Assembly: GCA_002269645.1 (NCBI GenBank)
Contig: NIVC01001488.1
Coordinates: forward strand, 48,026-112,025
Direction of reading: 5' to 3'
DNA: 64,000 nt
Origin: Macrostomum lignano
Lineage: Eukaryota
Made by a program: the position numbers and the translations under genes. Of the stretch, positions 1 through 31,302 are shown in pieces; position 1 is the first letter of the stretch; each line of letters opens with the position of its first letter. The notes beneath the pieces were generated by a model. The model worked only from the letters and a program-made list of their open reading frames with translations. It was not told the origin of the DNA and searched no databases.

Positions 1-80
1 TCGAGTGTTTCAGAAAGTTTGTACAAACATCCGACTGCTTTGAACCAAAATTGAACCAAAACAGTCCATATCTGACTCAC

Positions 81-7122: not shown

Positions 7123-7361
7123 GTAAATTTTCAGACAGTACTAGCAATCTACGCCCCCCGTTGGGGAGCCAAAGATATGCTATACACGTTTTTTTAATAA
7201 GCTACATGTATCCTTGAAATCTTAAAAAATCTCCTGTCAAACCTTGTAAGCCTTGACATGTCAGTAATTCCCCCCCCCAGCTTTAACATATCAACTTCCC
7301 CCCTTGACATCTCAGCAATGCCCCAATAAGCCTTGGAAATCTAAAAATATCTGTCAACCTT

Positions 7362-7394
7362 CTAACCCTAACCCTAACCCTAACCTAACCCTAA
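7362..7394. repeat. Interstitial telomere-type (CCCTAA)n tract within Helitron family 1; homologous tracts at 9765-9820 and 12703-12764
   Basis: Direct reading; same position in all three family-1 units, with differing lengths. Confidence 0.9.
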
Positions 7395-8289: not shown

Positions 8290-9399
8290 TTTCATGACGC
8301 TTCTATGATTGTTTACATGACGCTTCTATGCTTTTTACATGACGCTTCTATGCTTTTTACATGACGCTTCTATGATTATTTCATGACGCTTCTGTGATTG
8401 TTTACATGACGCTTCTATGATTTTTACATGACGCTTCTATGATTTTTATATGACGATTCTATGATTTTTACATGACGCTTCTATGATTTATACATGACGC
8501 TTCCATGATTTTTTACATGACGCTTCTATGTTTTTTACATGACGCTTCTATGATTTTTTCATGACGCTTCTACGATTTCTGCAGGACGCTTCTATGATTT
8601 TTTACATGACGCTTCTATGCTTTTTACATGACGCTTCTATGATTTTTTCATGACGCTCCTATGTTTTTTTCATGACGCTTCTATGATTTTTACATGACGC
8701 TACTATGATTTTTACATGACGCTTCCATGACTTTTTACATGACGCTTCTATGCTTTTTACATGACGCTTCTATGATTTTTTACATGACGCTTCTATGCTT
8801 TTTACATGACGCTTCCATGATTTTTTACATGACGCTTCCATGATTTTTTCATGACGCTTCTATGATTTTTACATGACGCTTCCATGATTTTTTACATGAC
8901 ACTTCTATGATTTTTTGCATGACGCTTCTATGATTTTTTACATGACGCTTCTATGATTGTTTACATGACGCTTCTATGATTTTTTACATGACGCTTCTAT
9001 GATATTTTCATGACGCTTCTATGATTGTTTACATGACGCTTCTATGATTTTTTACATGACGCTTCTATGATTGTTTATATGACGCTTCTATGATTTTTTA
9101 AATGACGCTTCTACGATTTTTTACATGACGCTTTTATGATGTTTTAGATGACGCTTCTATGATTTTTTACATGACGCTTCTATGATTTTTTACATGACGC
9201 TTCTATGATTGTTTACACGATGCTTCTATGATTTTTTACATGACGCTTCTATGATTTTTACATGACGCTTCTATGATTGTTTACATGACGCTTCCATGAT
9301 TTTTTACATGACGCTTCTATGATTTTTTTTCATGACGCTTCCATGATTTTTTACATGACGCTTCTATGATTTTTTACATGACGCTTCTATGATTTTTTA
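8290..9399. repeat. 21-22 bp tandem array (CATGACGCTTCTATGATTTTTTA), Helitron family 1 cargo
   Basis: About 50 visible tandem copies; boundaries approximate. Confidence 0.95.
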
Positions 9400-9541
9400 G
9401 TTTTCTTCTTGGTGTTAAAAAGCTTTAATTAAAAAAATTCCACTCTCTAAAAATTCGAACCATCGTCCCTGCATTTAGCAGTCAGTCTGTTTACCTCTAG
9501 GCTAGCTCTCATCGTTTTGATAATATGAATTTTAGCACTTA

Positions 9542-12476
9542 CTAGCAATCTACGCCCCCCCGTTGGGGAGCCAAAGAAATGCAATTCACGTTTTTTAATA
9601 AGTTACATGTATCCTTGAAATCTTAAAAAATCTCCTATCAAACCTTGTAAGCCTTGACATGTCAGTAATTCCCCCCACAAGCTTTAACATATCAACTTCC
9701 CCCCCTTGACATCTCAGCCATGCCCCCAATAAGCCTTGGAAATCTAAAAATATCTGTCAACCTTCTAACCCTAACCCTAGCCTAACCCCAACCCTAACCC
9801 TAACCCTAACCTAACCCTAAAGCATTGAAATTTCAGTAATTCTCTCTAAGAGTCATTATAGCACTACTACAGCATTATAGCGATTCCCTGCAAGCCTCGA
9901 CATCGTAGGGATTCCCAAATGAATATCTTAACTTCGACATGAAGCTTCTTTTATTTTTTACATTACGCTTTTTTAATCAGCGATCCCTCCCCTGAGGAGG
10001 CATCAAATAATGTAATAAAAAGTTTTCAATAAACTACATGTAGCTTCTGACTTTAGCCTTGAAATCTCATTTATACCCCCGTGAGCCTTGACATCTCAGC
10101 TATTCCCCCCGTAAGCCTTAACATGTCAGCGATGGCACCCATAAACCTTGAAATCTGAAAAATCCCCTGCTAACCTTGAAACTCGATAAAATATAACCCT
10201 CAACCCACACCTGACCTAAACCTAACTTTAACCCAACCTAAAGCCTTGAAATCTCAGCAATTCTTCTCCCCTAAGCCTTGACATTTTAGTGATTCCTTTA
10301 AGAATCACAGCACTATAACGATTTCCACCTAGCTTTGACATCGTAGCAATTCCCAAATGAATCTTTTAACTTCGACATGACTCTTCTTTTATGTATACTT
10401 AGTGCTACTTTTATTTTTTACATGACTCTTCTTCTATCAGCGCCTCCCGTGGCGAGCCAACAAAGAATGCAATAAAAAAATTGAGTAAAGTACATGAACT
10501 TTGAATTAGCTTCTGACTTTTGCTTTGACATCTCAGAAACCCCCCCCGTAATCTCAGTTATTCTCTGAGAGCCTTGACGTCTCAGTAATTCTCCCCAGCA
10601 CAGCATTATAGCTGCATTTAATTTTTCCATGACACCTTTCATGTCTGACATGACGCTTCTTTTATTCTACTATGATGCTTCTTAATTTTTTAAATGACAC
10701 TTTCATTAGTTTTTAAATGACGCTTCTATGATTTTTCATGACGCTTCTATGATTTTTACATGACGCTTCTATGATTTTTTACATGACGCTTCTATGATTG
10801 TTTACATGACGCTTCTATGATTGTTTACATGACGCTTCTATGATTTTTTAAATGACGTTTTTTGATTTTTATATGACGCCTCCATGATTGTTTACATGAC
10901 GCTTTAATGATTTTTTCATGACGCTTCTATGATTTTTACATGACGCTTCTATGATTGTTTACATGACGCTTCTATGATTGTTTATATGACGCTTCTATGA
11001 TTTTTTAAATGACGCTTCTACGATTTTTTACATGACGCTTTTATGATGTTTTAGATGACGCTTCTATGATTTTTTACATGACGCTTCTATGATTTTTTAC
11101 ATGACGCTTCTATGATTGTTTACACGATGCTTCTATGATTTTTTACATGACGCTTCTATGATTTTTTACATGACGCTTCTATGATTGTTTACATGACGCT
11201 TCTATGATTTTTACATGACGCTTCTATGATTGTTTACATGACGCTTCTATGATTGTTTATATGACGCTTCTATGATTTTTACATGACGCTTCTATGATTT
11301 TTTACATGACGCTTCTATGATTTTTTACACGATGCTTCTATGATTTTTTACATGACGCTTCTATGATTTTTTACATGACGCTTGTATGATTTTTTACATG
11401 ACGCTTCTATAATTATTTCATGACGCTTCTACGATTTCTGCAGGACGCTTCAATGATTTTTACATGACACCTCTATGATTTTTACATGACGCTTCTATGA
11501 TTTTTACATGACGCTTCTATGATTTTTTATATGACGCTTCTATGATTGTTTATATGACGCTTCTATGATTTTTTACATGACGCTACTATGATTTTTACAT
11601 TACGCTTCTATGATTGTTTACATGACGCTTCCATGATTGTTTACATGACGCTTCTATGATTTTTTACATGACGCTTCTATGATTGTTTACATGACGCCTC
11701 TATGATTTTTTACATGACGCTTCTATGATTGTTTACATGACGCTTCTATGATTTTTTACATGACACTTCTATGCTTTTTACATGATGCTTCCACGATTTT
11801 TTACATGACACTTCCACGATTTTTTACATGACGCTTCTATGATTTTTTACATGACGCTTTTATGATTTTTTTAGTTTTCTTGGCGTTAAAAAGCTTTAAT
11901 TAAAAAACTCTACTCTCTAAAAATTCGAACCATCGTTTCTGCATTTAGCAGTTCAGTCTGTTTACCTCTAGGCTAGCTCTCATCGTTTTGATAACATGAA
12001 TTCAGCACTTATAATTATAAGTTTCAAAACTCCAAGCATAGAGTAAATCACACGAGGCAGTTATTACATAATCAATTTCTCAGTCAGTCAGTATCAGTTA
12101 ACAATATGGTTGCGCAATCTAAATCAAGTCTGGTGCTACGCTTCCACACTGCATTTTCAATACTGTGACGCAATTCAATTCGGAGTTACAATTCAGTTAT
12201 GATGTAATCCATTTCAGAATCAGAATTCAACCAGTCAGTTTTTTCTCTAGCATTCTTACAATGCATTTCAAGTCGAAAAGTTTGCTTGACCTTTGCAAAA
12301 AAGCATGTTTTTCGAATATTTAATCGCTTTAACATGGAGCAATTTCTTAGCCAAGATGCATGTACCGTCCCAGGAAAATTTCTGATCGAACAGTGCAAGT
12401 CTCATGAAAATCGGTCCAGCCATTTTTTCTCTAATCGATTGCGTACAAACAAACAACTCATTTTTAGTATATAGGA
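9542..12476 (-). mobile_element. Helitron unit, family 1 (2935 bp)
   Basis: CTAG end at 9542 and TC start at 12476. Inserted into the outer copy at CACTTA|TAATTAT. Confidence 0.9.
10710..11870. repeat. 21-22 bp tandem array, second copy
   Basis: Same unit as 8290-9399 and shares diagnostic variant blocks with it; boundaries approximate. Confidence 0.95.
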
Positions 12477-15400
12477 CTAGCAATCTACGCCCCCCGTTGG
12501 GGAGCCAAAGAAATGCAATACACGTTTTTTTAATAAACTACATGTATCCTTGAAATCTTAAAAAATCTCCTGTCAAACCTTGTAAGCCTTGACATGTCAG
12601 TAATTCCCCCCCCCCACAAGCTTTAACATATCAACTTCCCCCCTTGACATCTCAGCAATGCCCCAAATAAGCCTTGGAAATCTAAAAATATCTGTCAACC
12701 TTCTAACCCTAACCCTAGCCTAACCCTAACCCTAACCCTAACCCTAACCCTAACCTAACCCTAAAGCATTGAAATTTCAGTAATTCTCTCTAAGAGTCAT
12801 TATAGCACTACTACAGCATTATAGCGATTCCCTGCAAGCCTCGACATCGTAGAGATTCCCAAATGAATCTCTTAACTTCGACATGAAGCTTATTTTATTT
12901 TTTACATTACGCTTTTTTTATCAGCGATCCCTCCCAGAGGAGGCATCAAATAATGTAATAAAAAGTTTTCAATAAACTACATGTAGCTTCTGACTTTAGC
13001 CTTGAAATCTCATTTATACCCCGTGAACCTTGACATCTCAGATATTCCCCCCGTAAGTCTTAACATGTCAGCGATGGCCCCATAAACCTTGAAATCTAAA
13101 AAATCCCCTGTTATTCTGTTAACCTTGAAATCCGATAAAATATAACCCTCAACCCACACCTGACCTAAACCTAACTTTAACCCAACCTAAAGCCTTGAAA
13201 TCTCAGCAATTCTTCTCCCCTAAGCCTTGACATTTTAGTGATTCCTTCTTTAAGAATCACAGCACTATAACGATTTCCCCAAGCTTTGACATCGTAGCAA
13301 TTCCCAAATGAATCTTTTAACTTCGACATGACTTTTCTTTTATGTATACGTAGTGCTACTTTTATTTTTTACATGACTCTTCTTCTATCAGCGCCCCCCC
13401 CGTGGCGAGCCAACAAATAATGCAATAAAAAATTGAGTAAAGTACATGACTTTGAATTAGCTTCTGACTTTTGCTTTGACATCTCAGAACCCCCCCCCCC
13501 CCGTAATCTCAGTTATTCTCTGAGAGCCTTTACGTCTCAGTTTTTCTCCCCAGCACAGCATTATAGCTGCATTTAATTTTTACATGACACCCTTCATGTC
13601 TGACATGACGCTTCTTTTATTCTACCATGATGCTTCTTAATTTTTTAAATGACACTTTCATTAGTTTTTAAATGAGGCTCCTATGATTTTTTCATGACGC
13701 TTCTATGATTTTTACATGACACTTCTATGATTTTTTATATGACGCTTCTATGATTGTTTATATGACGCTTCTATGCTTTTTACATGACGCTTCTATGATT
13801 TTTACATAACGCTTCCATGATTGTTTACATGACGCTTCTATGATTGTTTACATGACGCTTCTATGATTTTTTAAATGACGCTTCTATGATTATTTCATGA
13901 CGCTTCTACGATTTCTGCAGGACGCTTCAATGATTTTTACATGCCGCTTTTATGATTTTTACATGACGCTTCTATGATTGTTTACATGACGCTTCTATGA
14001 TTGTTTATACGACGCTTCTATGATTTTTACATGACGCTTCTATGCTTTTTACATGACGCTTCTATGATTGTTTACATGACGCTTCTATGATTGTTTCATG
14101 ACGCTTCTATGATTGTTTACATGACGCTTCTATGATTGTTTACATGACGCTTCTATGATTGTTTTCATGACGCTTCTATGATTGTTTATACGACGCTTCT
14201 ATGATTTTTACATGACGCTTCTATGATTTTTACATGACGCTTCTATGATTTTTTACATGACGCTTCTATGATTGTTTCATGACGCTTCTATGATTGTTTA
14301 CATGACGCTTCTATGATTTTTTACATGACGCTTCTATGATTGTTTACATGACGCTTCTATGATTGTTTATACGACGCTTCTATGATTTTTACATGACGCT
14401 TCTATGCTTTTTACATGACGCTTCTATGATTTTTTACATGACGCTTCTATGATTGTTTCATGACGCTTCTATGATTTTTTACATGACGCTTATATGATTG
14501 TTTACATGACGCTTCTATGATTTTTTACATGACGCTTCTATGATTGTTTACATGACGCTTCCATGATTTTTTACATGACGCTTCTATGATTGTTTACATG
14601 ACGCTTCTATGATTGTTTACATGACGCTTCTATGATTGTTTACATGACGCTTCTATGATTGTTTACATGACGCTTCTATGATTTTTATATGACGCTTCTA
14701 TGATTGTTTACATGACGCTTCTATGATTGTTTACATGACGCTTCTATGATTGTTTAAATGACGCTTCTATGATTGTTTACATGACGCTTCTATGATTTTT
14801 TACATGACGCTTCTATGATTGTTTACATGACGCTTCTATGATTTTTTACATGACGCTTCTATGATTGTTTACATGACGCTTCTATGATTTTTTACATGAC
14901 GCTTCTATGATTTTTACATGACGATTCTTTTTAAAAAGTCTTTTAGTTTTCCTGACGTTGAAAAGCTTTAATTAAAAAATTATACTCTATGAAAATCGAA
15001 CCATCGTCGCTGCATTTAACAGTTCAGTTTGTTCACCTCTAGGCTAGCTCTCATCGTTTTGATAACATCAAATTTTGCACTTATATAATTCAACACTTTA
15101 AAATCCAAGCATAGAGTAAATCACACGAAGCAGTTATGACATAATCAGTTTCTCAGTCAGTCAGTATCAGTTAACAATATGGTTACGCAATCTAAATCAA
15201 GTCTGGTGCTACGCTTCCACACTGCATTTTCAATTCAAGTCGGAGTTACAATTCAGTTATGATGCAATCTATTTCAGAATCAGAATTCAACCAGTCAGTT
15301 TTTTCTCTAGCATTCTTACAATGCATTTCAAGTCGAAAAGTTTGCTTGACCTTTGCAAAAAAGCATGTTTTTCGAATATTTAATGCCTTTAGCATCAAGA

Positions 15401-15536
15401 AATTTCTTAGCCACGATGCATGTACAGTCACGGGAAAATTTCTGATTGAACAGTGCAAGTTCGAACAAAATCGGTACAGCCATTTTTTCTCTAATCGATC
15501 ACATAGACACAGACAGACCATTTTTAGTATATAGGA
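12477..15536 (-). mobile_element. Helitron unit, family 1 (3060 bp)
   Basis: Exact head-to-tail junctions TATATAGGA|CTAGCAATC at 12476/12477 and 15536/15537. Confidence 0.9.
13670..14925. repeat. 21-22 bp tandem array, third copy
   Basis: Same unit as 8290-9399; boundaries approximate. Confidence 0.95.
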
Positions 15537-15685
15537 CTAGCAATCTTCGCCCCCCGATGGGGGACATCTGGATAGAATCTCTGTTCTCTACAATTAACAA
15601 AAAGACAGCCAAAAAATCCTTCACAAAGACAACAGACAAACTGCTCAAATGAAGTGAATTGCAATAAGAAATCTTCCCAAGACCA

Positions 15686-16195
15686 CAAGCATCCCCCAGA
15701 TAGCAAGCATCCTCCAGATAGCAAGCATTCTCCCAGATAGCAAGCATTTCCCAGATAGCAAGCATCCCCAAGATAGCAAGCATCCTCCAGATAGCAAGCA
15801 TCCCCAGATAGCAAGCATCCCCCAGATAGCAAGCATCCCCCAGATAGCAAACATCCCCAGATAGCAAGCATTCCCCAGATAGCAAGCATTCCGCAGATAG
15901 CAAGCATCCCCAGATAGCAAGCATCCCCAAGATAGCAAGCATCCCTCAGATAGCAAGCATACCCCAAGATAGCAAGCATCCCTCAGATAGCAAGCATACC
16001 CAGATAGCAAGCATCCCCAGATAGCAAGCATCCCCAGATAGCAAACATCCCCAGATAGCAAGCATCCCCCAGATAGCAAGCATTCCCCAGATAGCAAGCA
16101 TTCCCCAGATAGCAAGCATCCCCAGAAAGCAAGCATCCTCCAAATAGCAAGCATCCCCAAGATAGATAGCATCCCCAAATAGCAACCATCCACCA
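15686..16195. repeat. ~18 bp tandem array (CAGATAGCAAGCATCCCC), Helitron family 2 cargo
   Basis: Visible tandem copies; this array produces the spurious MLAIWG/DACYLG ORFs. Confidence 0.95.
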
Positions 16196-16296
16196 GACAA
16201 TAAGTAGCTAGAGCGACAATTTCCTTAGCTTTATAGTGGCTCCTTTAAATTGGCATGGCGCTTTATACCTTTACATTTGAAATTGGATATCTTGAA

Positions 16297-19200
16297 TGTT
16301 TGACATGGTGGCTCTTTTATGTTTGACATAGTGGCTCTTCTATGTTTGACATGGTGGCTCTTTTATGTTTGACATAGTGGCTCTTTTATGTTCGACATGG
16401 TGGCTCTTCTATGTTTGACATGGTGGCTTTTTTAGGTTTGACATGGTGGCTCTTTTATGTTTGACATGTTGACTTTTTTATGTTCGACACGGTGGCTTTT
16501 TAATGTTCGACATGGTGGCTCTTTTAGGTTTGAACCGGTGGCTCTTTAATGTTTGACATGGTGGCTCTTTAATGTTCGACATGGTGGCTCTTTTATGTTC
16601 GACATGGTGGCTCTTTAATGTTTGACATGGTGGCCCTTTAATGGTTAACATGGCGGCTCTTTAATTTTCGAAATGGTGGCTCCTTAATTTTCGAAATGGT
16701 GGCTGTTTTATGTTTGACATGGTGGCTCTTTAATGTTCGACATGGTGGCTCTTTAATGTTTGACATGGTGTCTGTTTTATGTTTGATATGGTGGCTCTTT
16801 AATGTTCGACATGGTGGCTCTTTAATGTTTGACATGGTAACTATTTTATGTTTGATATGGTGGCTCTTTAATGTTCGACATGGTGGCTCTTTAATGTTCG
16901 ACATGGTGGCTCTTTAATGTTCGACATGGTGGCTCTTTAATTTTTAACATGGTGACTCTTTTATGTTCGACATGGTGGCTCTTTTATGTTTGACATAGTG
17001 GCTCTTCTATGTTTGACATGGTGGCTCTTTAATGTTTGACATGGTGGCTCTATTATGTTTGACATGGTGGCTCTTCTATGTTTGACATGGTGGCTTTTTT
17101 AGGTTTGACATGGTGGCTCTTTTATGTTTGACATGTTGGCTTTTTAATGTTCGACATGGTGGCTTTTTAATGTTCGACATGGTGGCTCCTTTAGGTTTGA
17201 AATGGTGGCTCTTTAATATTTGACAAGGTGGCTCTTTAATGTTCGACATGGTGGCTCTTTTAGGTTTGAACCGGTGGCTCTTTAATGTTTGACATGGTGT
17301 CTGTTTTATGTTTGACATGGTGGCTCTTTAATGTTCGACATGGTGGCTCTTTAATGTTCGACATGGTGGCTCTTTAATTTTTAACATGGTGACTCTTTTA
17401 TGTTCGACATGGTGGCTCCTTAAGGTTTGAAATATTGGCTCTTTAATGTTTAACATGGTGGCTTTTCTATGTTCGACATGGTGGCTTTTCTATGTTCGAC
17501 ATGGTGGCTCTTGTATGTTCGACATGGTGGCTCTTTTAATGGTCGACATGGTGGCTCTTTAATGTTCTTCATGTTGGCTCTTTTATGTTTGACATGGTGG
17601 CTTTTTTATGTTTGACATGGTGGCTCTTTTATGTTCTACATAGCTGCTCTTTTATGTTCGACATTGTGGCTCTTGTATGTTCGACAGGGTCGCTCTTTTA
17701 GGTTTGAAATGGTGGCTCTTTAATATTTGACAAGGTGGCCCTTTAATGTTTAACATGGCGGCTCTTAAATTTTCGAAATGGTGGCTGTTTTATATTTGAC
17801 ATGGTGGCTCTTTAATGTTCGACATGGTGGCTCTTTAATGTTCTTAATGGTGTCTGTTTTATGTTTGACATGGTTGCTCTTTTATGTTCGACATGGTGGC
17901 TCTTTAATTTTTAACATGGTAACTCTTTTATGTTTGATATGGTGGCTCTTTTATGTTCGACATGGTGGCTCTTGTATGTTCGACATGGTGGCTTCTTTAG
18001 GTTTGAAATGGTGGCTCTTTAATATTTGACAAGGTGGCTCTTTAATGTTCGACATGGTGGCTCTTTTAGGTTTGAAATGGTGGCTCTTTAATATTTGACA
18101 AGGTGGCTCTTTAATGTTTGACATGGTGGCTCTTTAATGTTCGACATGGTGGCTCTTTAATGTTTGACATGGTAACTCTTTTATGTTTGATATGGTGGCT
18201 CTTTTATGTTCGACATGGTGGCTCTTTAATGTTTGACATGGTGGCTCTTTAATGTTTGACATGGTAACTCTTTTATGTTTGATATGGTGGCTCTTTAATG
18301 TTCGACATGGTGGCTCTTGTATGTTCGACATGGTGGCTTCTTTAGGTTTGAAATGGTGGCTCTTTAATATTTGACAAGGTGGCTCTTTAATGTTTGACAT
18401 GGTGGCTCTTTAATGTTTGACATGGTGGCTCTTTTAGGTTTGAAATGGTGGCTTTTTAATGTTTGACAATGTGGCTCTTTAATGTTTGACATGGTGGCTT
18501 TTTAATGTTCGACATGGTGGCTCTTTTAGGTTTGAACCGGTGGCTCTTTAATGTTTGACATGGTGGCTCTTTAATGTTTGACATGGTGTCTGTTTTATGT
18601 TTGACATGGTGGCTCTTTAATGTTCGACATGGTGGCTCTTTTAGGTTTGAACCGGTGGCTCTTTAATGTTTGACATGGTGGCTCTTTAATGTTTGAAATG
18701 GTGGCTCTTTAATGTTCGACATGGTGGCTCTTTAATTTTTAACATGGTGACTCTTTTATGTTCGACATGGTGGCTCCTTTAGGTTTGAAATATTGGCTCT
18801 TTAATGTTTAACATGGTGGCTTTTCTATGTTCGACATGGTGGCTTTTCTATGTTCGACATGGTGGCTCTTGTATGTTCGACATGGTGGCTCTTTTATGTT
18901 CGACATGGTGGCTCTTGTATGTTCGACAGGGTCGCTCTTTTAGGTTTGAAATGGTGGCTCTTTAATATTTGACAAGGTGGCCCTTTAATGTTTAACATAG
19001 CGGCTCTTAAATTTTTGAAATGGTGGCTCCTTAATTTTCGAAATGGTGGCTGTTTTATATTTGACATGGTGGCTCTTTAATGTTCTTAATGGTGTCTGTT
19101 TTATGTTTGACATGGTGGCTCTTTAATTTTTAACATGGTGGCTCTTTTAGGTTTGAAACGGTGGCTCTTTAATGTTTGACATGGTGACTCTTTAATGTTT

Positions 19201-19905
19201 GACATGGTGGCTTTTCTATGTTCGACATGGTGGCTCTTGTATGTTCGACATGGTGGCTTCTTTAGGTTTGAAATGGTGGCTCTTTAATATTTGACAAGGT
19301 GGCTCTTTAATGTTCGACATGGTGGCTCTTTAATGTTTGACATGGTGGCTCTTTTAGGTTTGAAATGGTGGGTCTTTAATGCTTGACAATGTGGCTCTTT
19401 AATGTTTGACATGGTGGCTCTTTAATGTTCGACATGGTGGCTCTTTAATGTTTGACATGGTAACTCTTTTATGTTTAATATGGTGGCTCTTTTATGTTCG
19501 ACATGGTGGCTCTTTAATGTTTGACATGGTGGCTATTGAATGTTTGACATGGTAACTATTTTAGGTTTGAAATGGTGGGTCTTTAATGCTTGACAATGTG
19601 GCTCTTTAATGTTTGACATGGTAACTCTTTTATGTTTGATATGGTGGCTCTTTTATGTTCGACATGGTGGCTCTTTAATTTTCGACATGGTGGCTCCTTT
19701 AGGTTTGAAATGGTGGCTCTTTAATGTTTGACATGGTGGCTCTTCTATGTTCGACATGGTGGCTCTTTAATGTTCGACATGGTGGCTCTTTAATTTTTAA
19801 CATGGTAACTCTTTTATGTTCGATATGGTGGCTCTTTTATGTTCGACATGGTGGTTCTTTAATGTTCGACATGGTGGCTCCTTTAGGTTTGACATGGTGG
19901 CTCTT
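16297..19905. repeat. ~23 bp tandem array (ATGTTTGACATGGTGGCTCTTTA), Helitron family 2 cargo
   Basis: About 3.6 kb of visible tandem copies. Confidence 0.95.
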
Positions 19906-20677
19906 CTATTGCGCTTTTTTTATGTTTAGCAGTTTTTTAGTTTTTAAGGTGTTTTAATAAAAAAATTATTTTGCGCTTCTAAGACTCGAACCCAGGTCGC
20001 TACATTAGCATTCCAGTCTGTTCGCATCAGGGCTATCTCTTTTCAATTGGAGAACATGAATTGTGGCCCTTATAATTCAATTCTTACAGCAAGTCAATTG
20101 GAGTAAAAAGTTATGACATAATCAATTTCTCAGTCAGCCAGTATCAGTCTCACTTCGAGTTAGCAATATGGTTACGCAATTTCAATCAAGTCGTGTGTGC
20201 ATTTCTTCGGCACTGTTTTCAACTTGTTGTGATGCAATCTTTATCAGAATTGAAATTCAGTCAGTCAGTTTTTTCTCTAGCATTCTTACAATGCATTTCA
20301 AGTCGAAAATTTTGCTTGACCTTTGCAAAAAAGCGTGTTTTTCGAATATTTAATCCCTTTAACATTGAGCAATTTCTTAGCCAAGATGCATGTACTGTGC
20401 CAGGAAAATTTCTGATCGAATGATGCAAGTTTGAAGAAAATCGGTTGAGCCGTTTTTTCTGAAATCAATCGCATACCCATATACATACATACATACAGAC
20501 AACTCATTTTTAGTATATAGGACTAGCAATCTTCGCCCCCCGATGGGGGGCATCTAGATAGAATCTCTGGCACTCTACAAGTATCAAAAAGACGGCCAAA
20601 TAAAGCCTTCACATAGACAATAGAAAAACTGCTCAAATGAAGTGCAATGCAAAAAAATATCCCAGGACAGCAAGCAA

Positions 20678-21675
20678 CCCCCCAGATAGCAAGCACCCCC
20701 AGATAGCAAGCATCCACCTAATAGCAAGCACCCTTAGATAGCAAGCATCCCCAGATAGCAAGCATCTCCAGATAGCAAGCACCCCCAGATAGCAGGCACC
20801 CCAGATAGCAAGCATCCACCTAATAGCAAGCACCCTTAGATAGCAAGCACCCCCAGATAGCAAGCACCCCCAGATAGCAAGCACCCCAAGTAGCAAGCAT
20901 CTCTAGATAGCAAGCACCCCCAGATAGCAGGCACCCCAGATAGCAAGCATCCACCTAATAGCAAGCACCCCAAGATAGCAAGCAATTACCTAATAGCAAG
21001 CACCCTTAGATAGCAAGCACCCCCAGATAGCAAGCACCCCCAGATAGCAAGCATCTCCAGATAGCAAGCACCCCCAGATAGCAAGCATCCACCTAATAGC
21101 AAGCACCCCCAGATAGCAAGCATCCACCTAATAGCAAGCATCCACCTAATAGCAAGCACCCCCAGATAGCAAGCACCCCCAGATAGCAAGCATCTCTAGA
21201 TAGCAAGCACCCCCAGATAGCAGGCACCCCAGATAGCAAGCATCCACCTAATAGCAAGCACCCCCAGATAGCAAGCATCTCCAGATAGCAAGCACCCCCA
21301 GATAGCAGGCACCCCAGATAGCAAGCATCCACCTAATAGCAAGCACCCCCAGATAGCAAGCACCCCCAGATAGCAAGAACCCCCAGATAGCAGGCACCCC
21401 AGATAGCAAGCATCCACCTAATAGCAAGCACCCCCAGATAGCAAGCACCCCCAGATAGCAAGCACCCCCAGATAGCAAGCACCCCCAGATAGCACGCATC
21501 TCCAGATAGCAAGCACTCCAAGATAGCAGGCACCCCAGATAGCAAGCATCCACCTAATAGCAAGCACCCCCAGATAGCTAGAACCCCCAAGATAGCAAGC
21601 ATTCCCCCAGATAGCAAGCACCCCCAGATAGCACGCATCTCCAGATAGCAAGCACTCCAAGATAGTAGGCACCCC
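20678..21675. repeat. ~18 bp tandem array, second copy
   Basis: CAGATAGCAAGCACCCC variants. Confidence 0.95.
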
Positions 21676-21677
21676 AT

Positions 21678-23375
21678 TTATGTTTGACATGGTAGCTGTT
21701 TTGTGTCTGACATGGTGGCTCTTTAATGTTTGAGCTGGTGGCTCTTTTATGTTTGACATGGTGGCACTTTAATGTCTGAAATGGAGTCATGTATACGCTT
21801 GACATGGTGACTCGTAGATGTTTGACAAAGTGGCTCTTTTATGTTCGACATGTGGCTCTTTAATGTTTGACATGGTGGCTCTTTAATGTTTGACATGGTG
21901 GCTCTTTAATGTTTGACATGGTGGGTCTTTAATTTATGACATGGTGGCTCTTTTATGTTTGACATGATGGCTCTTTAATGTTCGACATGGTGGCTGTTTA
22001 ATGTTTGTTATGTAGTCATATGTATATGTTTTACATGGTGGCTCTTTTATGTGTGACATGGAGTCACGTATATATTTGACATGGAGTCACATATGTTTGA
22101 CATGGTGGCTCTTTAGTGTTCGATATGGTGGCTCTTTAATGTTTGACATGGTGGCTCTTTTATGTTTGACATAGTGGCTCTTTAATGTCTGACATGGTGG
22201 CTCTTTAATGTTTGACATGGTGGCTCTTTTATGTTTGACATGATGGCTCTTTAATGTTCGACATGGTGGGCTGTTTAATGTTTGTTATGTAGTCATATGT
22301 ATATGTTTTACATGGTGGCCCTTTTATGTGTGACATGGAGGCACGTATATATTCGACATGGAGTCACATATGTTTGACATGGTGGCTCTTTAGTGTTCGA
22401 TATGGTGGCTCTTTAATGTTTGACATGGTGGCTCTTTAATGTCTGACATGGTGGCTCTTTAATGTTTGACATGGTGGCTCTTTTATGTTCGACATGTTGG
22501 CTCTTTAGTGTTTGACATGGCTCTTTAATGTTTGACATGGTGGCTCTTTTATGCTTGACATGGTGGCTCTTTAATGTTCGACATGGTGGCTCTTTAATGT
22601 TTGACATGGTGGCTCTTTTATGCTTGACATGGTGGCTCTTTTATGTTTGACATGGTGGCTCTTTTTTGTTCTACATGGTAACTCTTTTATGTTTGATACG
22701 GTGGCTTTTTAATATCTGACATTGTGGCTCTTCTATGTTTGACATTGTGGCTCTTTTATGTTTGACATGGTGGCTCTTTAATGTTTGACATGGTGGCTCT
22801 TTAATGTACGACATAAAGGTTCGTTTATGTTCGACATGGTGGCTCTTTTAGGTTTGACATGGTAGCTCTTTTATGTTCGACATGGTGGCTCTTTTAGGTT
22901 TGACATGGTGGCTCTTTTAGTTTTGACATGGTAGCTCTTTTATGTTCGACATGGTGGCTCTTAAATGTTTCACATGATGGCTCTTAAATGTCTTACATGG
23001 TGGCTCTTTTATGTTTGACAATGTGGCTCTTTAATGTTTTACATGGCGGCTCTTTTATGTTCGAAATGGTGGCTCTTTAATGTTCGACATGGTGGCTCTT
23101 TAATGTTTGACATGCTAGCTCTTTAATGTTCGACATAGTGGCTCTTTTATGTTTGGCATGGTGGCTCTTTAATGTTCTTCATGGTGGCTCTTTTACGTTT
23201 GACATGGTGGCACTTTAATGTTCGACGTGGTGGCTCTTTAATATTCGAAATGGTGACTCTTTAATGTTTCACATGGTGGCTCTTTAATGTTTGACATAGA
23301 GTCACGTATTTGTTTTACATGGTGCCCATGTAATGTTTGACATGGTGCCTCTTTTATGTTTGACATTGTGCTTTT
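21678..23375. repeat. ~23 bp tandem array, second copy
   Basis: Same unit as 16297-19905 but more degenerate. Confidence 0.95.
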
Positions 23376-23434
23376 TTATGTTTAGCAGTTTCGTGTTTTC
23401 AAGGTGTTTTATAAAAAAATTATTTTGCACTACT

Positions 23435-23493
23435 AAGATTCGAACCCAGGTCGCTACGTTGGCAGTCCAGTCTGTTCGGATCTAGGCTATCTC
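23435..23493 (-). ncRNA. tRNA-derived Pol III A/B-box cassette inside Helitron; homologues at 9451-9508, 11921-11979, 14994-15050 and 19981-20040
   Basis: Minus strand TAGCCTAGATCC..CTGGACTGCCAAC..CTGGGTTCGAATCTTAG followed by a T-run. The T-arm can pair; the acceptor and anticodon stems are imperfect, so this is not a true tRNA. Confidence 0.6.
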
Positions 23494-24510
23494 TTTTCAA
23501 TTGGAGTACATGAATTGTGGCCCTTATAATTAAATTCTTACAGCAAGTCAATTGGGGTAAAAAGTTATGACATAATCAATTTCTCAGTCAGCCAGTATCA
23601 GTCTCAGTTCAAGTTAGCAGTATTGGTTACGCAATTTTAATCAAGTCGTGTGTGCATTTCTTCGGCACTGTTTTCAACTTGTTGTGATGCAATCTTTATG
23701 ACAATCAGAATTCAGCCAGTCAGTTTTTTTCTCTAGCATTCTTACAATGAATTTTAGGTCGAAAGAGCTGCTTGACCTTTGCAAAAAAGCATGTTTTTCG
23801 AATATTTAATCCCTTTATCATTGAGCAATTTTTTAGCCAAGATGCATGTACCGTCCCAGGAAAATTTCTGATCGAATGGTGCAAGTTTGAAGAAAATCGG
23901 TTGAGCCATTTTTTCTGAAATCTATCGCATACCTACCCACATACAGACAACTCATTTTTAGTATATAGGATTAGTATATTTAGATTATTATAAGTTTCAA
24001 AACTCCAAGCATAGAGTAAATTACACGAGGCAGTTATGACATAATCAATTTCTCAGTCAGTCAGTATCAGTTAGCAATATGGTTACGCAATTTGAATCAA
24101 GTCTGGTGCTACGCTTCCACACTGCATTTTCAATACTGTGACGCAATTTAAGTCGGAGTTACAATTCAGTTATGATGCAATCTATTTCAGAATCAGAATT
24201 CAACCAGTCAGTTTTTTCTCTAGCATTCTTACAATGCATTTCAAGTCGAAAAGTTTGCTTGACCTTTGCAAAAAAGCATGTTTTTCGAATATTTAATCCC
24301 TTTAACATGGAGCAATTTCTTAGCCAAGATGCATGTACCGTCACTGGAAAATTTCTGATCGAACAGTGCAAGTCTCATGAAAATCGGTCCAGCCATTTTT
24401 TCTCTAATCGATTACAAGCAAGCAAGCAAGATTTTCATTTTTAGTATATAGGATTTGCATGTACTACTATACTTTGGCAAAGCTGATGCATAAGAAATTC
24501 AAATTTTCAG

Positions 24511-24810
24511 ACACGGCTGAATGTCGAACAACGTTCTCAGGAGAGGATTAAGTTGGATCTAAGAGCTCAGCTATCATCTATCAGCGCTCAAATATAGCGC
24601 TGGAGTCAGAGAACATCACTGCAATTAAACTTCCGCCACTCAGGTCCCAAGTGCGGTGCATGAATTGGAACGATGCTGCTCGGAAATTGAAACGAAGAAG
24701 TGCTGAAGCACTTGCTGACAAGCTGCTCGCGCTTAACTACTCAAACAGCGAGTCAAGGTGCCGCTCTCCCCCTGGCCTACCTCTGACGGAGTTTTTAACC
24801 ATAGCGAACC
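24511..24810 (+). CDS. DEG/ENaC exon 2: kringle-like module
   Basis: TTTTCAG acceptor and GTAAGT donor, 300 nt, phase 1-1. It reads DTAECRTTFSGED*VGSKSS...RCMNWN...SRCRSPPG, matching the kringle C-x5-G-x-x-Y-x-G, C-x-x-W and CRxP motifs. The C-terminal PWC/C..C part of a canonical kringle is absent. Confidence 0.65.
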
Positions 24811-24881
24811 GTAAGTGCCAAGCGTTCCAACAAAACATCTACATAAGTTGGTTAACTTTCAATCCACGCCTTGAATCCCAG

Positions 24882-25175
24882 GTCCACTACTGAAACTGCT
24901 TGGATGCTATGCTGCAAACTCGACCGGCTTTGAGTTCAACTTTACTTGCGGCACCGGCGGGCTGGTCAGCCACGAGGCCTGCGCCGACTGCTGCGGTCTC
25001 CTTGGATACTCGCACATCGGGCTGCAGCCCGGCAGCTGCCTCTGTGGCAACGGCTTTCCCGGCTCGGGCAACAGCAGTAGCAACAGCAGCATCTGCAACA
25101 GCAGCTGCATCAGCAACCGGAAGCAGGCCTGCGGATCGCCGACTGCCGTAACCGTGATACAGATTGCGGACACGG
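24882..25175 (+). CDS. DEG/ENaC exon 3: WSC domain
   Basis: CCCAG acceptor and GT donor, 294 nt, phase 1-1, no stops. It reads LLGCYAANSTG..SHEACADCCGLLGYSHIGLQPGSCLCGNGFP..SICNSSCISNRKQACGSPTAVTVIQI, which has WSC Cys spacing (GC+, CxxxC, GY, CxCGN, CxxxC, QxCG). This frame is not in the supplied ORF track. Confidence 0.85.
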
Positions 25176-26437
25176 GTGGGTTGTTTGGTTAAAAGTCGCA
25201 AAATCTTTATTTTTAAGCATCATTCTACAAGCTAATTCCATATTTTCAGGGATATTAGTCACAATTGAGTCGGAATAAATAAACTATTTATTTAATTAGA
25301 GTTGAAAACAGAAAGTAAGTGTGGCGCAGGGCTTAAACGGGTATAATAACAAGGCAATAAATTAGAGGGAGAGGTTGGGTGCAGATAAGAAAAGGAGGGG
25401 GTGGAATGCGCGACTGAGGAAAGAGGCGAGACTGAAGAGCCAATCAGAAGGCGTCAAGGGAGAGAGAGAGAAGAGACAAGACCTGAACAAGACAGAGGGA
25501 GAGAAAACAAGTAAACAGATACAAGTGCAAACAAACTGAATAAGTGGCTAAGAAAGCCGCGAAATTGACGAATCATTCCGCTTACAGAACCGAAGCCTTT
25601 GCAAATCGGAAACTTCAGCAATCTGACAGTCTTATCTAACGGGCCGTATTGTTTCTTTTTGGATGAGCTTGATAAACTGAATGCAGCCTTCTGTGACATT
25701 CCGTTTTGCCGTAAGTTTTCGAATTAGGCAAAGTTTTAGCTTTAGCTCTTAAAATCGATAGTGGCGCTCTTTATTGCATTTCAGCTACTGCCAGCGCCTT
25801 TGATTGCATAGTAAGCTCCGATGAAGAGGTCGTTCAAAAGCAGCAGCGAGCAAAGTATACTGGTCGAAAAAATGTTTCCTCTACCGGAAAGCCGTGCTTG
25901 CCATGGAGCTCGCTTGAAGAAAGCATGTCGAGGCGCTTCTTTTTCGGTTTGTTTGAACCGAACAAGTCATTTTGAATTCTGTCTGAAGGCACTGATAAAA
26001 TCTTTTTTGATTTTTCTTTCAGGACCATACAATTTTCTCGGCTTTGACATTCGAACGCCCGACTACAGTGAACAAGGTGGCGAAAATTTTTGTCGATCAG
26101 TTGAAATCATAGCGGAAGATAGCGTTGAATCCAGAGTAAAACGGTATAATATACGTACTTTTCTTTGAACATTGATTAGGTAAATGCATTTGCCTCAAGT
26201 CATACGTACCGCCCCTCACGTGGTTGCTTCAGTCGGTATCCGATTGCTTTTTCTGACACACCTGTGTGCGCCGTGAACACTGGAGCTGCCGTTGCGTTCG
26301 CGAACGTTGAGCTTGAGCCATGCGACATTGCATACTGCTGTAATTATGCCAAATGTTGTAGCTATAGTCGAAGAATAAGAGCGTAATGCAGTCTCAACAA
26401 CAATAAAATTAACCGCAATTAAACTCTGCGCCCATAG

Positions 26438-28918
26438 ATTCAGCAGTACCGACTGTGACAGGGGCCATCAGGGACTCGGTCGGGAGCCACCTGCTGGCAC
26501 GCCAGTTCGGCAGCGACCTCAGTATCAGCCTTGCGAACTGCAGCTTCGCTGGTCAGAAATGCACAAAGGATGACTTTTTGAACATTGCCCACCCCCAGCT
26601 GGGCATGTGCCATCAGTTTCTCAAGCAGCGTTTCACTGCCAGCATGACCAGCAGGCAACAGGCCCAGAGTCAGCTGTCAATCAAGTACTTTACTGACGCA
26701 ACCGACTCGAAGGGACAGATGGTAGCCAACATGGATCAACTGGCTGGAGTCGTGCACGGCAGCGTGGATTCCGATGCCAGCCGAATTGCATTCAAGGGAG
26801 GAATTTTCGCCTAAACTTTTCAGGGACCAACTTTTCAGGAAACTGGAAACTGATGGTCCAATAGGAGCTGGGAGACCACAGAGGGGCGCAGCCAGGGGGA
26901 GGGCAATGGCACCGCGGCCCCATCCCCAGTAAGTAACAGAAATTATGGTGCCCTTTTCCAGCTGACTGGCGCCTCCTTCAAGACAGCTTTAGTGCCCCTC
27001 ACAATGGGTTGGGCACCCTCTGTTCCTAATTTTAGCATTACCTTAACAACTAGTTTGCCTTTGGCGCCAATGGTACTGGCGCCACTACTGGTGCTGTCGC
27101 CCACGAAAAGCACGGATCATCAATAATAAATCCTTGCTTCGCTCTAGGACCTCAGAAAACGGAGTAGACGACGAGAAATTATGAACCATGCAAGATTTTC
27201 TTCTCTTTTTAAGTCCACCAAGCCGTCTCCCTATCATTGTCTTCATCTTACAGGCGATAATCGTTCCGGAGAGCAGCTTCCCCTGGCCATCGAAGGGCAT
27301 CGACGTAGCCGCTGCTCAACGCATGGATGTGCAGCTGAGACTCGATAAATTCTCCAAACTCTCCACCGCTCGGAGACCCTGCTCGGAGGTTCCCGAGCCA
27401 ATTGTGTACCGGCTACCGTCGTGGAAGCAGGCCGATTCGAACAAGGAATTGGAGTAAGTGCGAAAGTGCTCTACCTGCCATGGTAGCAAGCACTGTTTTA
27501 AGAATACCATTAATTTTGTAATAACACTTCAGCATGAGTACGGATCTTGAGGCGGTAGTCTCTGCCGCCGATTGGAAACAAAGGCTCGCACACTTTCAAA
27601 TGATGCTGGAAACTCTGAACAGCTCCAGGTTTGTTTAAGAAAAAAGGCTTCACAAAGGACAAATTTTTTAAGTTCCAAATATTTATTGATTTTTAGAGCT
27701 TTAACTGGAGTAGACAAAGTATTCAGCTACACTGACATGGAGGACTGCATCAACACCTACGTTGTCGAGAAGTTCATCGATAAATGCCGCTGCTTGCCCT
27801 CGTTTTTGCCTGTCCGAGCCGATTTCTTTGCAAGACATGCTTACTGCTTCGACACCCAAACTATGCCAAATATTTCCACGGAAACCGACTTATGCTTCAG
27901 GAATCAAGTCGCGAATCTGGTGCAGTACCAGTTCGATGCCGTCAGCCTCTGCAAGGCTGCGTGCTACACAACTGATTTCAGCGCCCGGCACATTACGTAT
28001 CCGTGGCCGAATCTGAACAGCTTCCGGTCGCTGGCGTTTTTGAAGAACCTCGCCTTTGCCCTCGGATACGGCAGCAGTCCGAGTGGCCTCAGGGGAATCA
28101 ACAGCGTCTACTGCGCCTATTTGAGATCGCTGAACTTCACTCAATCGCCAGCCAGTATGAGGAACCCGCTGGACATTCTCAGCTTCGACAGCGAGCTGAC
28201 GGCACTTCAAAACAGACTTGCCCAGCTAACAGTTCAGGCCTGGACATCGTACGGACAGGAGGTCTCAGAGGAAGAGGCTTATCCCGCCAAGAACCTTCTG
28301 GCTGACATTGGAGGTTAGATAACAAGTTTGCTAACGAAATTGTTTCCTAGTACTCGTAACTAAATGTTCGATTCGCTTGTAATTGAAAAACTGGCCCAAA
28401 GGTTGTCGTACGATTCACATCCACGAAGGCCAACCCCCAAGGAACCCGGAAGTGTACATGTCTGACGATTAGAAAGTCAAGGCCGCTGTTAATCCCGTGT
28501 GAGCGTGAGGGAGGCTGGTTCAGCGATTCAAGCCAGTGAAAGCTATCCCTAGCCGGACCATTCAAAGCATTGTCGAGTCCAAAGAGGTTTTACTTACGTG
28601 CTGTGGCAAATCTTTTTAAGTAAATTTTATCTGCATAAAAACCAAGAAGTTATCGATACTTTTTGCAAGTAAACCTTCAATTTTACTTTAGGAGCCCTTG
28701 GTCTCTGGTCCGGAATTTCTATTCTGACTGCCTGCGAACTGTTTGAGCTTCTGCTCTACTTTGCGCTGGCTGTGGGAGCTCGAATGCGCGAGTGTCGTCA
28801 GGCAGCCACCGGCTCTGCTGGGCACCTGCAAGGACCTGCAGTTTTGAGTAGCGGCAGCAGGCCGACTGTGCGAGCCGACGATGTTGAATTGAAAATTGAT
28901 GCAGACTCCAAGCTGTGA
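26438..28918 (+). CDS. DEG/ENaC exons 4-7 (palm, thumb, TM2, C-terminus)
   Basis: Exons 26438-26796, 27254-27453, 27697-28313 and 28692-28918. DIGG is joined to ALGLWSGISILTACELFE, and the CDS ends at TGA 28916-28918. Confidence 0.9.

Positions 28919-29447: not shown

Positions 29448-31302
<1,855 letters not shown>

What the first reader, a model, noticed from the sequence alone, without database searches (positions are those of the whole stretch)
24511..25175. DEG/ENaC channel with a kringle-like + WSC module spliced into its ectodomain
Seen in sequence: two symmetric phase-1/phase-1 exons (300 and 294 nt), largely invisible in the ORF track, fall between DEG/ENaC exon 1 and the CSFAG..C..DDF exon. 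One encodes a WSC domain with the characteristic Cys spacing. The other encodes kringle N-terminal motifs (C..GED-Y?-VG, CMNW, CRSP) but lacks the PWC end. Established: this position is the variable finger region that binds ligands in ENaC/FaNaC channels; kringle followed by WSC is the Kremen ectodomain order; WSC domains are linked to glycan binding and to stress/mechanosensing (yeast Wsc1, polycystin-1). Inference: exon shuffling grafted an adhesion or glycan-binding module onto a sodium channel, suggesting a matrix-tethered or glycan-gated channel class. I cannot confirm whether this architecture has already been catalogued.
Basis: partly seen in the sequence, partly recalled or inferred. 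Interest (0 to 1): 0.88.

Follow-up and report, generated by a model that had tools for sequence, protein, structure and literature searches.

The report
Flatworm sodium channel with kringle–WSC insert
The two exons are real parts of a flatworm (Macrostomum) DEG/ENaC sodium-channel gene whose outer "finger" region carries a roughly 380-residue kringle-like/WSC binding module, an architecture present in database gene models but not found in the papers searched. The copy in this window looks like a recently disabled pseudogene.

Summary
Exon 24882-25175 encodes a WSC domain (Pfam 35.9 bits, cut-off 27.8). Exon 24511-24810 encodes the N-terminal two thirds of a divergent kringle-like domain.

Exon 25588-25710 supplies the "missing" kringle end (GPYCFF…CDIPFC). 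The WSC domain is therefore nested inside kringle 1, and a second kringle-like domain follows. The conceptual product has 1037 codons, not 834.

At least eight Macrostomum lignano paralogues share the same ASC + kringle-like/WSC architecture, four of them from an RNA-seq-based annotation. One locus has the same exon phases. In a library representing about 15 billion proteins, every full-length module match whose source was checked was M. lignano.

The window copy has two in-frame TAA codons at invariant Tyr positions and a GT>GG splice donor, so it is probably a young pseudogene.

I found no paper describing this architecture; UniProt only auto-names the proteins. A role as a glycan- or matrix-binding tether or gate is inference.

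Verdict: a new variant of a known channel family, of moderate interest.

The parts
6615..7122 (+). Exon 1 of the DEG/ENaC gene: N-terminus, HG motif (TTAHGLGRF), TM1 and FPDV*ICP. It has an in-frame TAA at 6891-6893 where all homologues have Tyr.
   Evidence: Pfam ASC 39 bits; tblastn to P0001 residues 15-179; stop position.
7123..24510 (+). Intron 1, 17.4 kb, filled with satellite arrays (23-bp and 17/18-bp units) and a repeated ~300-bp spacer element. The corresponding intron in M. lignano locus L001 is about 100 bp.
24511..24810 (+). It encodes the N-terminal part of kringle-like domain K1 (Cys1, G-E-D-[Y>stop]-x-G, CMNW, SRCRSPPG). In-frame TAA at 24549-24551.
24882..25175 (+). It encodes a complete WSC domain nested inside K1.
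   Evidence: Pfam WSC 35.9 bits vs cut-off 27.8; Kremen1 WSC best PDB hit; Foldseek Kremen1 and Wsc1.
25588..25710 (+). Exon 4, 123 nt, phase 1-1.
   Evidence: (aligns to the Kremen1 kringle C-terminus).
25785..25946 (+). Exon 5: start of kringle-like domain K2 (DC…KYTGRKNVSSTGKPCLPWSS). The donor is less certain (25946 GT, or 25934 GC).
26023..26143 (+). Exon 6: middle of K2 (IRTPDY…GENFCRS). The 3' boundary is less certain.
26233..26339 (+). Exon 7: end of K2 (TPVC…EPCDIAYC). The 5' boundary is less certain.
   Evidence: alignment A1.
26438..26796 (+). Exon 8: the DEG/ENaC ectodomain resumes (ANCSFAGQKCTKDDF…). The donor after 26796 is GG instead of GT (M. lignano TTCAAG|gtgagt, window TTCAAG|ggagga).
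27254..27453 (+). Exon 9, DEG/ENaC ectodomain.
27533..27628 (+). Exon 10, DEG/ENaC ectodomain.
27697..28313 (+). Exon 11, Cys-rich DEG/ENaC ectodomain up to ADIGG.
   Evidence: Pfam ASC.
28692..28918 (+). Exon 12: TM2 (GALGLWSGISILTACELFE, with GIS at the filter position as in FaNaC) and C-terminus. TGA stop at 28916-28918.

Best explanation
The two exons are exons 2 and 3 of a 12-exon DEG/ENaC gene (window 6615-28918, + strand). The gene belongs to a subfamily so far seen only in the flatworm Macrostomum lignano, which is very probably the source of the window.

In this subfamily, about 380 residues are inserted between the post-TM1 segment and the CxFxGxxC segment, where FaNaC has about 35 residues. 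The insert consists of kringle-like domain K1, interrupted between its third and fourth Cys by a complete WSC domain, followed by a second kringle-like domain K2. The whole insert, and each of exons 2-5, is phase 1-1. This fits stepwise exon shuffling into a phase-1 intron, with the WSC exon dropped into the intron inside K1.

The window copy carries two TAA nonsense codons at invariant Tyr positions and a GT>GG donor. It is therefore most likely a recently inactivated paralogue.

Inferred, not shown: in intact paralogues the module crowns each subunit of the trimer as a protein- or glycan-binding head. It either tethers the channel to extracellular matrix, mucus or glycocalyx, or binds a ligand, and passes this on to the gate through the finger.
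For: Gene and module:
- Homology-guided gene model with conserved exon phases.
- The M. lignano locus has the same exon structure.
- Pfam ASC and WSC are above cut-off.

Paralogues:
- At least eight M. lignano proteins have ASC on both sides of the same module.
- P0001, P0006, P0007 and P0013 come from the GenBank Mlig_3_7 annotation, which is built from RNA-seq and transcriptome assemblies (PMC5730564).

Kringle evidence:
- The K2 profile hits only kringles in the PDB, down to E 4e-5.
- The module profile hits a six-kringle protein at E 6e-22.
- K1 with the WSC removed aligns to K2 across the insertion point (hhalign E 2.7e-6).
- K1 also aligns to 13 canonical kringles over their full length (probability 94.7%). 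K2 scores 96.8%. Column-shuffled controls reach at most 8%.
- Kremen1 is the top solved relative by sequence and by fold.

Position: the insertion point relative to FaNaC comes.

Pseudogene: stops at 6891 and 24549 and the GG donor at 26797. M. lignano genes end in TAA, TAG or TGA. A 361-bp repeat is 97% identical to an M. lignano contig.
Against: - Pfam's kringle model never reaches its cut-off: at most 17.9 bits against 34.3, and no hit at all for exon A.
- The AlphaFold models are of low confidence (pLDDT 58 and 67.5), and the K2 model finds no kringle in Foldseek.
- The window copy has no frameshifts in 3.1 kb. It keeps every Cys and departs from family-invariant positions no more than intact paralogues do (3 of 61). 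The three defects could therefore be assembly errors or a null allele rather than a fixed pseudogene.
- There is no expression or functional data for any member. The binding or tether role is pure inference.
Confidence: 0.8

Rival explanations
1. The window copy is a working gene. The two TAA codons and the GG donor are assembly or sequencing errors, or belong to one null haplotype of a functional locus.
For: There are no indels in 3.1 kb of coding sequence and all other splice sites are canonical. All Cys residues and 58 of 61 family-invariant module positions are kept, as in intact paralogues. A neighbouring actin fragment has a 1-nt homopolymer frameshift, which could be an assembly error.
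Against: There are three independent inactivating substitutions, and long-read assembly errors are mostly indels, not substitutions. No protein from this locus is in the 15-billion-protein collection. Intron 1 has swollen to 17 kb of satellites, against about 100 bp in the paralogue.
Confidence: 0.17
2. The ASC + WSC/kringle architecture is a gene-prediction artefact that fuses a nested or neighbouring secreted-protein gene with a channel gene.
For: Chimeric models are common in metazoan annotations (PMC3927609, listed). M. lignano has polycistronic, trans-spliced units (PMC5730564). Several UniProt models of this family are visibly truncated or missing exons (P0002-P0004, P0008, P0012).
Against: The module is internal, with channel exons on both sides: TM1 upstream and the remaining ectodomain plus TM2 downstream. 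All junctions are in frame with matching phases in two loci. The same order recurs in at least eight paralogues that are 30-54% identical. Four models are transcript-based. The module has no start codon or signal peptide of its own.
Confidence: 0.03
3. TAA is read as tyrosine in this organism, so the gene is intact apart from the donor.
For: Both in-frame TAA codons fall on Tyr positions that are invariant in all paralogues. By chance this has probability about 0.03 for Tyr and about 0.008 for Tyr>TAA. The gene and the actin fragment both end in TGA.
Against: The M. lignano paralogue P0001 ends in TAA, and neighbouring genes end in TAG and TGA. The window shares a 97%-identical repeat with M. 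lignano. The other 32 Tyr codons in the gene are TAC or TAT. Tyr codons are the commonest one-step source of stops. To my knowledge no animal nuclear code reassigns TAA.
Confidence: 0.01

Closest known systems
Kremen1/Kremen2 ectodomain (kringle-WSC-CUB; Dickkopf co-receptor)
   Same: It is the best solved-structure match for the module by sequence (E 1.6e-8) and by fold (Foldseek probability 0.98). It also combines a kringle and a WSC domain, which pack against each other (PMC5014086).
   Different: Kremen has the domains in series, followed by a CUB domain and a single TM helix. Here the WSC is nested inside the kringle, a second kringle-like domain follows, there is no CUB, and the host is an ion channel. 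Both kringle-like domains carry long insertions and fall below Pfam's cut-off.
FMRFamide-gated sodium channels (FaNaC) and the DEG/ENaC family in general
   Same: Closest solved channels are 7yvb and 8on7 (E 1e-14 and 1e-12). Shared features are the HG motif, FPxVxxC after TM1, the Cys-rich ectodomain and the GIS motif in TM2. From my own knowledge of the family, the finger region is the variable part that holds the peptide site in FaNaC and the protease-sensitive GRIP insert in ENaC.
   Different: About 35 residues of FaNaC (161-195) are replaced by about 465 residues in P0001, including an autonomous ~380-residue module. I found no report of a DEG/ENaC carrying recognisable adhesion-type domains. 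The M. lignano channels tested by Dandamudi et al. 2022 (Mlig049925.g2, Mlig051885.g1, Mlig041003.g1) have other gene identifiers than the four GenBank models seen here.
Polycystin-1 and yeast Wsc1 (WSC domains in mechanosensing or stress-sensing surface proteins)
   Same: A WSC domain is displayed at the cell surface and linked to a signalling or channel machine. Yeast Wsc1 is a Foldseek hit (probability 1.0, TM-score 0.54 normalised to the target).
   Different: In those proteins the WSC sits in a receptor that partners with a channel or a kinase pathway. Here it is part of the pore-forming subunit itself. A mechanosensory role has not been tested.
MEC-4/MEC-10 degenerins tethered to extracellular matrix
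   Same: As an analogy only: a DEG/ENaC channel thought to be gated through extracellular attachments (my own knowledge).
   Different: In C. elegans the matrix links are separate proteins (MEC-1, MEC-5, MEC-9). Here a candidate binding module is built into the channel.

Membership tests
DEG/ENaC (Pfam ASC, PF00858) | Profile match above the curated cut-off | tested here: met
   Window exon 1 scores 39 bits and exon 11 scores 35 bits against a cut-off of 23.6. Homologues score 64-147 bits.
DEG/ENaC (Pfam ASC, PF00858) | Two TM helices, N-terminal HG motif, FPxVTxC after TM1, and a G/S-x-S filter in TM2 | tested here: met
   Read directly from the sequence: TTAHGLGRF, FPDV*ICP, LWSGISILTACE. 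These align to FaNaC GLWMGISVLT.
DEG/ENaC (Pfam ASC, PF00858) | Intact reading frame and splice sites (a working gene) | tested here: not met
   TAA at 6891 and 24549; GG donor at 26797. Intact paralogues exist.
DEG/ENaC (Pfam ASC, PF00858) | Amiloride-sensitive Na+ current | not testable with these tools
   Needs expression of an intact paralogue.
WSC domain (PF01822) | Profile match above the curated cut-off over the full domain | tested here: met
   Window exon 3 scores 35.9 bits against 27.8, covering profile positions 2-81 of 82. P0006 scores 39.1 and P0013 scores 41.1. P0001, P0010, P0011 and P0015 score 24.6-26.4, just below the cut-off.
WSC domain (PF01822) | Similarity to solved WSC structures | tested here: met
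   HMMER against the PDB finds the Kremen1 WSC (domain E 3.6e-6) and yeast Wsc1 (E 7.6e-8). Foldseek gives probability 0.98-1.0 to Kremen1 and Wsc1, on a low-confidence model.
WSC domain (PF01822) | Carbohydrate binding | not testable with these tools
   Needs a glycan array with the recombinant module.
Kringle (PF00051) | Profile match above the curated cut-off (34.3 bits) | tested here: not met
   K2 scores 10.6-17.9 bits, over the N-terminal half only. K1 and exon A give no hit.
Kringle (PF00051) | Six-Cys framework with the motifs Y-x-G, C-x-x-W, C-R-x-P, G-P-[WY]-C and C-x-[IV]-P-x-C | tested here: met
   The Cys residues are invariant across paralogues. hhalign to 13 kringles covers template columns 3-78 of 78: K1 94.7%, K2 96.8%. 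Shuffled controls reach at most 7.7%.
Kringle (PF00051) | Significant homology to bona fide kringles in database searches | tested here: met
   The K2 profile against the PDB returns almost only kringles, down to E 4e-5. The module profile hits the six-kringle protein P0132 at E 5.7e-22. K1 alone gives no significant PDB hit but matches K2 at E 2.7e-6.
Kringle (PF00051) | Kringle fold | tested here: inconclusive
   The AlphaFold K2 model (pLDDT 67.5) found no kringle in Foldseek. The whole-module model (pLDDT 58) matched Kremen1 over about 170 columns, but with RMSD 15 Å.
Kremen family | Serial kringle-WSC-CUB ectodomain on a single-pass membrane protein | tested here: not met
   The order is nested, no CUB hit appears in Pfam, and the host is a two-TM channel.

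The most novel reading that the evidence does not exclude
Macrostomum has evolved a class of DEG/ENaC channels in which a Kremen-like kringle/WSC head is built into each finger domain. This head acts as the gating sensor: a covalently integrated tether to glycans or matrix (a mechanosensor with its own gating spring), or a receptor for a protein or glycan ligand. Because every module exon is frame-symmetric, alternative splicing could switch the WSC domain or the whole head on and off.
Probability: 0.2. Interest if true: 0.8.

Novelty: new variant of a known kind. Interest (0 to 1): 0.55.

Why it matters
DEG/ENaC channels are gated by very different stimuli (protons, peptides, proteases, force), and the variable finger region is where much of that specificity lies. 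A subfamily that has taken a complete kringle/WSC adhesion-type module into this position is a natural experiment in how an extracellular binding domain can be coupled to a channel gate.

It gives a concrete construct for testing tether-based or glycan-based gating: an intact paralogue such as P0001 or P0015, with and without the module. It is also a clean example of exon shuffling, with one domain nested inside another. M. lignano is a transgenic model animal, so expression and knock-down tests are feasible.

The copy in this window is probably dead, so its value is as a pointer to the family.

Tried and rejected
1. Word-indexed homology search with the two exons alone found nothing. With the module alignment it returned only 4 hits. 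The exhaustive HMMER scan was needed.
2. The K1 profile with the WSC removed gave only chance-level PDB hits (talin, E about 0.5). Kringle identity for exon A rests on profile-profile comparisons.
3. AlphaFold2 with 8-sequence alignments gave weak models. The K2 model found no kringle in Foldseek. I treat the fold test as inconclusive, not negative.
4. Reassignment of TAA to Tyr was considered because both stops sit on invariant Tyr. I rejected it because M. lignano genes end in TAA and the window shares a 97%-identical repeat with that genome.
5. The idea that the exons belong to another transcript or a fused prediction was rejected. The module is internal, phase-consistent and recurs in transcript-based models.
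6. A GC donor at 26808 (TTC|GCCTAA) could rescue exon 8 in frame, but it is a poor site. The homologous donor position reads GG.
7. I could not name the source record of the window. The collections that can be searched by DNA similarity hold no eukaryotic genomes.

Full report
**What is at the coordinates**

- The second exon (PLLKLLGCYAANSTG…CGSPTAVTVIQIADT) matches Pfam WSC over positions 2-81 of 82. It scores 35.9 bits against a curated cut-off of 27.8.
It contains an in-frame TAA and gets no Pfam kringle hit, even at E ≤ 10.
- ORFs at 6615-6893, 26455-26814 and 27572-28318 match Pfam ASC. The flanking DEG/ENaC gene is therefore real.

**Relatives**

A search with only the channel parts of the gene returned 13 proteins, all from the flatworm Macrostomum lignano. 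Nine carry precomputed Pfam WSC + ASC.

Their sequences hold, between the post-TM1 segment and the CxFxGxxC segment, clear homologues of both reader exons plus about 190 further residues. tblastn of the best hit (P0001, 1049 aa) against the window aligns along the whole protein. It reveals additional coding pieces at about 25593-25712, 25772-25915 and 26049-26117.

**Gene model**

I scored every GT/GC-AG pair near each alignment break by the alignment of the spliced product to P0001. This gives 12 exons:

- 6615-7122
- 24511-24810
- 24882-25175
- 25588-25710
- 25785-25946
- 26023-26143
- 26233-26339
- 26438-26796
- 27254-27453
- 27533-27628
- 27697-28313
- 28692-28918

The model has 1037 codons and ends in TGA.

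Donor 25175, however, pairs with 25588, so four exons were missed.

Exact mapping of P0001 onto its own genomic locus (L001, contig NIVC01004126.1) shows the same exon order and the same intron phases: 1,1,1,1,1,2,1,0,…. Exons 2-5 are each phase 1-1, and the whole insert (exons 2-7) begins and ends in phase 1.

The boundaries of exons 5/6 and 6/7 are the least certain.

**Anatomy of the insert**

An alignment of the window product with five paralogues shows 56 invariant columns, including every Cys.

- Exon 4 reads …SNGPYCFFLDELDKLNAAFCDIPFC. This is the GPWC…C-I-P-x-C end of a kringle.
- A profile of the whole module finds Kremen1 as the best solved protein (E 1.6e-8). The WSC aligns to the Kremen WSC, and exon 4 aligns to the C-terminus of the Kremen kringle.
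- The segment from exons 5-7 (K2), used as a profile, hits almost only kringles in the PDB (prothrombin, HGF, tPA, ROR1/2, apolipoprotein(a)), down to E 4e-5.
- Exon 2 + exon 4 with the WSC removed (K1) gives no significant PDB hit alone.
- K1 does align to K2 across the excision point (hhalign probability 88.5%, E 2.7e-6).
- K1 also aligns to 13 canonical kringles over their entire length (probability 94.7%, E 5.6e-8). K2 gives 96.8%.
- Sixty column-shuffled versions of each alignment scored 11 ± 2.7 (maximum about 20, probability at most 8%), against 46 and 57 for the real ones.
- The exhaustive scan of 1.84 billion representatives also returned a Darwinula protein (E 5.7e-22). Pfam shows that it holds six true kringles.

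The WSC exon therefore sits inside kringle-like domain K1, between Cys3 (SRCRSPPG) and Cys4 (GPYC), and K2 follows.

Both kringle-like domains have long extra loops and stay below Pfam's cut-off (at most 17.9 bits against 34.3). "Kringle-like" is the right level of claim.

AlphaFold2 with only eight sequences gave weak models.

- The whole module (pLDDT 58) matched Kremen1 (probability 0.98) and yeast Wsc1 (probability 1.0).
- K2 alone (pLDDT 67.5) matched no kringle.

The fold test is inconclusive.

**Position in the channel**

P0001 against the PDB finds FaNaC structures first (7yvb, E 1.3e-14). Residues 20-106 align to FaNaC 73-160, and residues 572-600 align to FaNaC 196-224. So about 465 residues replace about 35.

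From general knowledge of ASIC, ENaC and FaNaC structures, this is the finger region.

**Is the architecture real or a prediction artefact?**

The module is internal to the channel, and all junctions keep the frame in two independent loci. The order recurs in paralogues only 30-54% identical to each other.

P0001, P0006, P0007 and P0013 carry BOX15_Mlig locus tags from GenBank assembly GCA_002269645.1. That annotation was derived from RNA-seq with StringTie/TACO and a de novo transcriptome (PMC5730564). This is indirect transcript support for the joined exons in the paralogues. I could not examine reads for the window locus.

**Distribution**

In the exhaustive scan, matches to the whole module were limited to nine or so representatives. 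Every one whose source is known is M. lignano. The other roughly 2,700 hits match only the WSC part or, rarely, kringles.

**State of the window copy**

There are three defects.

- TAA at 6891-6893, inside FPDV[Y]ICP.
- TAA at 24549-24551, inside GE[ED][Y]xG.
- GG in place of the GT donor after 26796. M. lignano reads TTCAAG|gtgagt and the window reads TTCAAG|ggagga.

Both stops replace Tyr residues that are invariant in all paralogues. By chance this has a probability of about 0.03, because Tyr codons are the commonest one-step source of stops.

A recoding explanation is very unlikely. P0001 itself ends in TAA and its neighbours end in TAG and TGA. The window also shares a 361-bp element, 97% identical, with the M. 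lignano contig (2980-3339 against L001 12281-12640), which places the window in M. lignano or a very close relative.

No protein from this locus is in the collection. Intron 1 is 17.4 kb of satellites here, against about 100 bp in L001.

On the other hand, there are no indels. Every Cys is kept, and only 3 of 61 family-invariant module positions differ, the same as in intact paralogues.

The most likely reading is a recently inactivated paralogue, which is plausible in this partly duplicated genome (PMC5730564). Assembly error or a null allele is the main alternative.

**Function**

Nothing is shown. Inference from the parts:

- WSC domains are carbohydrate-binding or surface-sensor modules (yeast Wsc1, PMC9024836).
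- In Kremen, the kringle and WSC form a rigid protein-binding platform (PMC5014086).
- The K1 and K2 sequences lack acidic residues at the CRNPD-x-D position. From memory, that position forms the lysine-binding site of plasminogen kringles. If so, the domains would resemble the non-lysine-binding kringles of Kremen and ROR.

Three copies of a kringle/WSC head on top of the finger domains could tether the channel to matrix or mucus glycans, or bind a ligand, and influence gating. Equally, the head could only localise the channel.

**Literature**

No paper in the library combines WSC or kringle with DEG/ENaC, degenerin or amiloride-sensitive channel.

Dandamudi et al. 2022 expressed three M. lignano DEG/ENaCs from a clade next to FaNaC and saw no peptide responses. 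Their gene identifiers differ from those of the four GenBank models seen here.

UniProt auto-names the family members "WSC domain-containing protein". The architecture is therefore catalogued by machine, but I found no description of it.

**Verdict**

The finding is real and was read largely correctly, but it is incomplete. The module is three nested or tandem domains over six exons, one junction was wrong, and this copy is probably a pseudogene. It is a new variant of a known channel family, confined so far to one flatworm genus, with an attractive but untested mechanistic implication.

Noticed in passing
window 6891-6893 and 24549-24551: Both premature stops in the channel gene are TAA, and both replace Tyr residues that are invariant in all paralogues. 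The chance probability is about 0.03 for Tyr and 0.008 for Tyr>TAA. I read this as ordinary nonsense mutation, because M. lignano genes end in TAA.
   Followed up: partly
window 7123-24510: Intron 1 is 17.4 kb and is made largely of satellite arrays. 23-bp units lie at 8180-9399, 10648-11871, 13603-14928, 16290-19905 and 21677-23383. 17/18-bp units lie at 15686-16197 and 20669-21675. A ~300-bp element repeats between them at about 12186-12483, 15246-15534, 20193-20423 and 24159-24444. The homologous intron in M. lignano locus L001 is about 100 bp.
   Followed up: partly
window ~30270-31302 (+): This is an actin fragment. It starts at about residue 43 of a typical actin, directly after an 18-bp tandem array (29836-30285). 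It has a 1-nt frameshift in a C run near 30460 (…ELRVAP / EEHPVLL…) and then runs without introns to a TGA stop. It is probably a truncated, possibly processed, pseudogene, or the frameshift is an assembly error.
   Followed up: partly
window 2980-3339 (- relative to L001 12281-12640): A 361-bp non-coding stretch is 97% identical to an M. lignano contig. It is presumably an interspersed repeat and is the best clue to the source organism. A second piece (2805-2976) is 88.5% identical to L001 19173-19343.
   Followed up: no
window ~40100-62000 (-): A long multi-exon coiled-coil gene is present, with Pfam Rootletin matches at 54541-55242 (131.8 bits) and 61213-62007 (25.2 bits, below cut-off). 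Several introns hold minisatellites, for example 42200-43800, 47600-48440, 53150-53800 and 56600-59200.
   Followed up: partly
window 10-285 (-): This is an exon of a Cys-loop ligand-gated ion channel (Pfam Neur_chan_LBD, 31 bits). The gene runs off the window's start.
   Followed up: no
proteins P0002, P0003, P0004, P0008, P0012 (M. lignano, UniProt): Several database models of this family are truncated or lack single exons. P0002 starts inside K2, P0011 lacks exon 4, and P0008 is fused to unrelated sequence. Because every module exon is frame-symmetric, some of these could be real exon-skipping isoforms rather than prediction errors.
   Followed up: no
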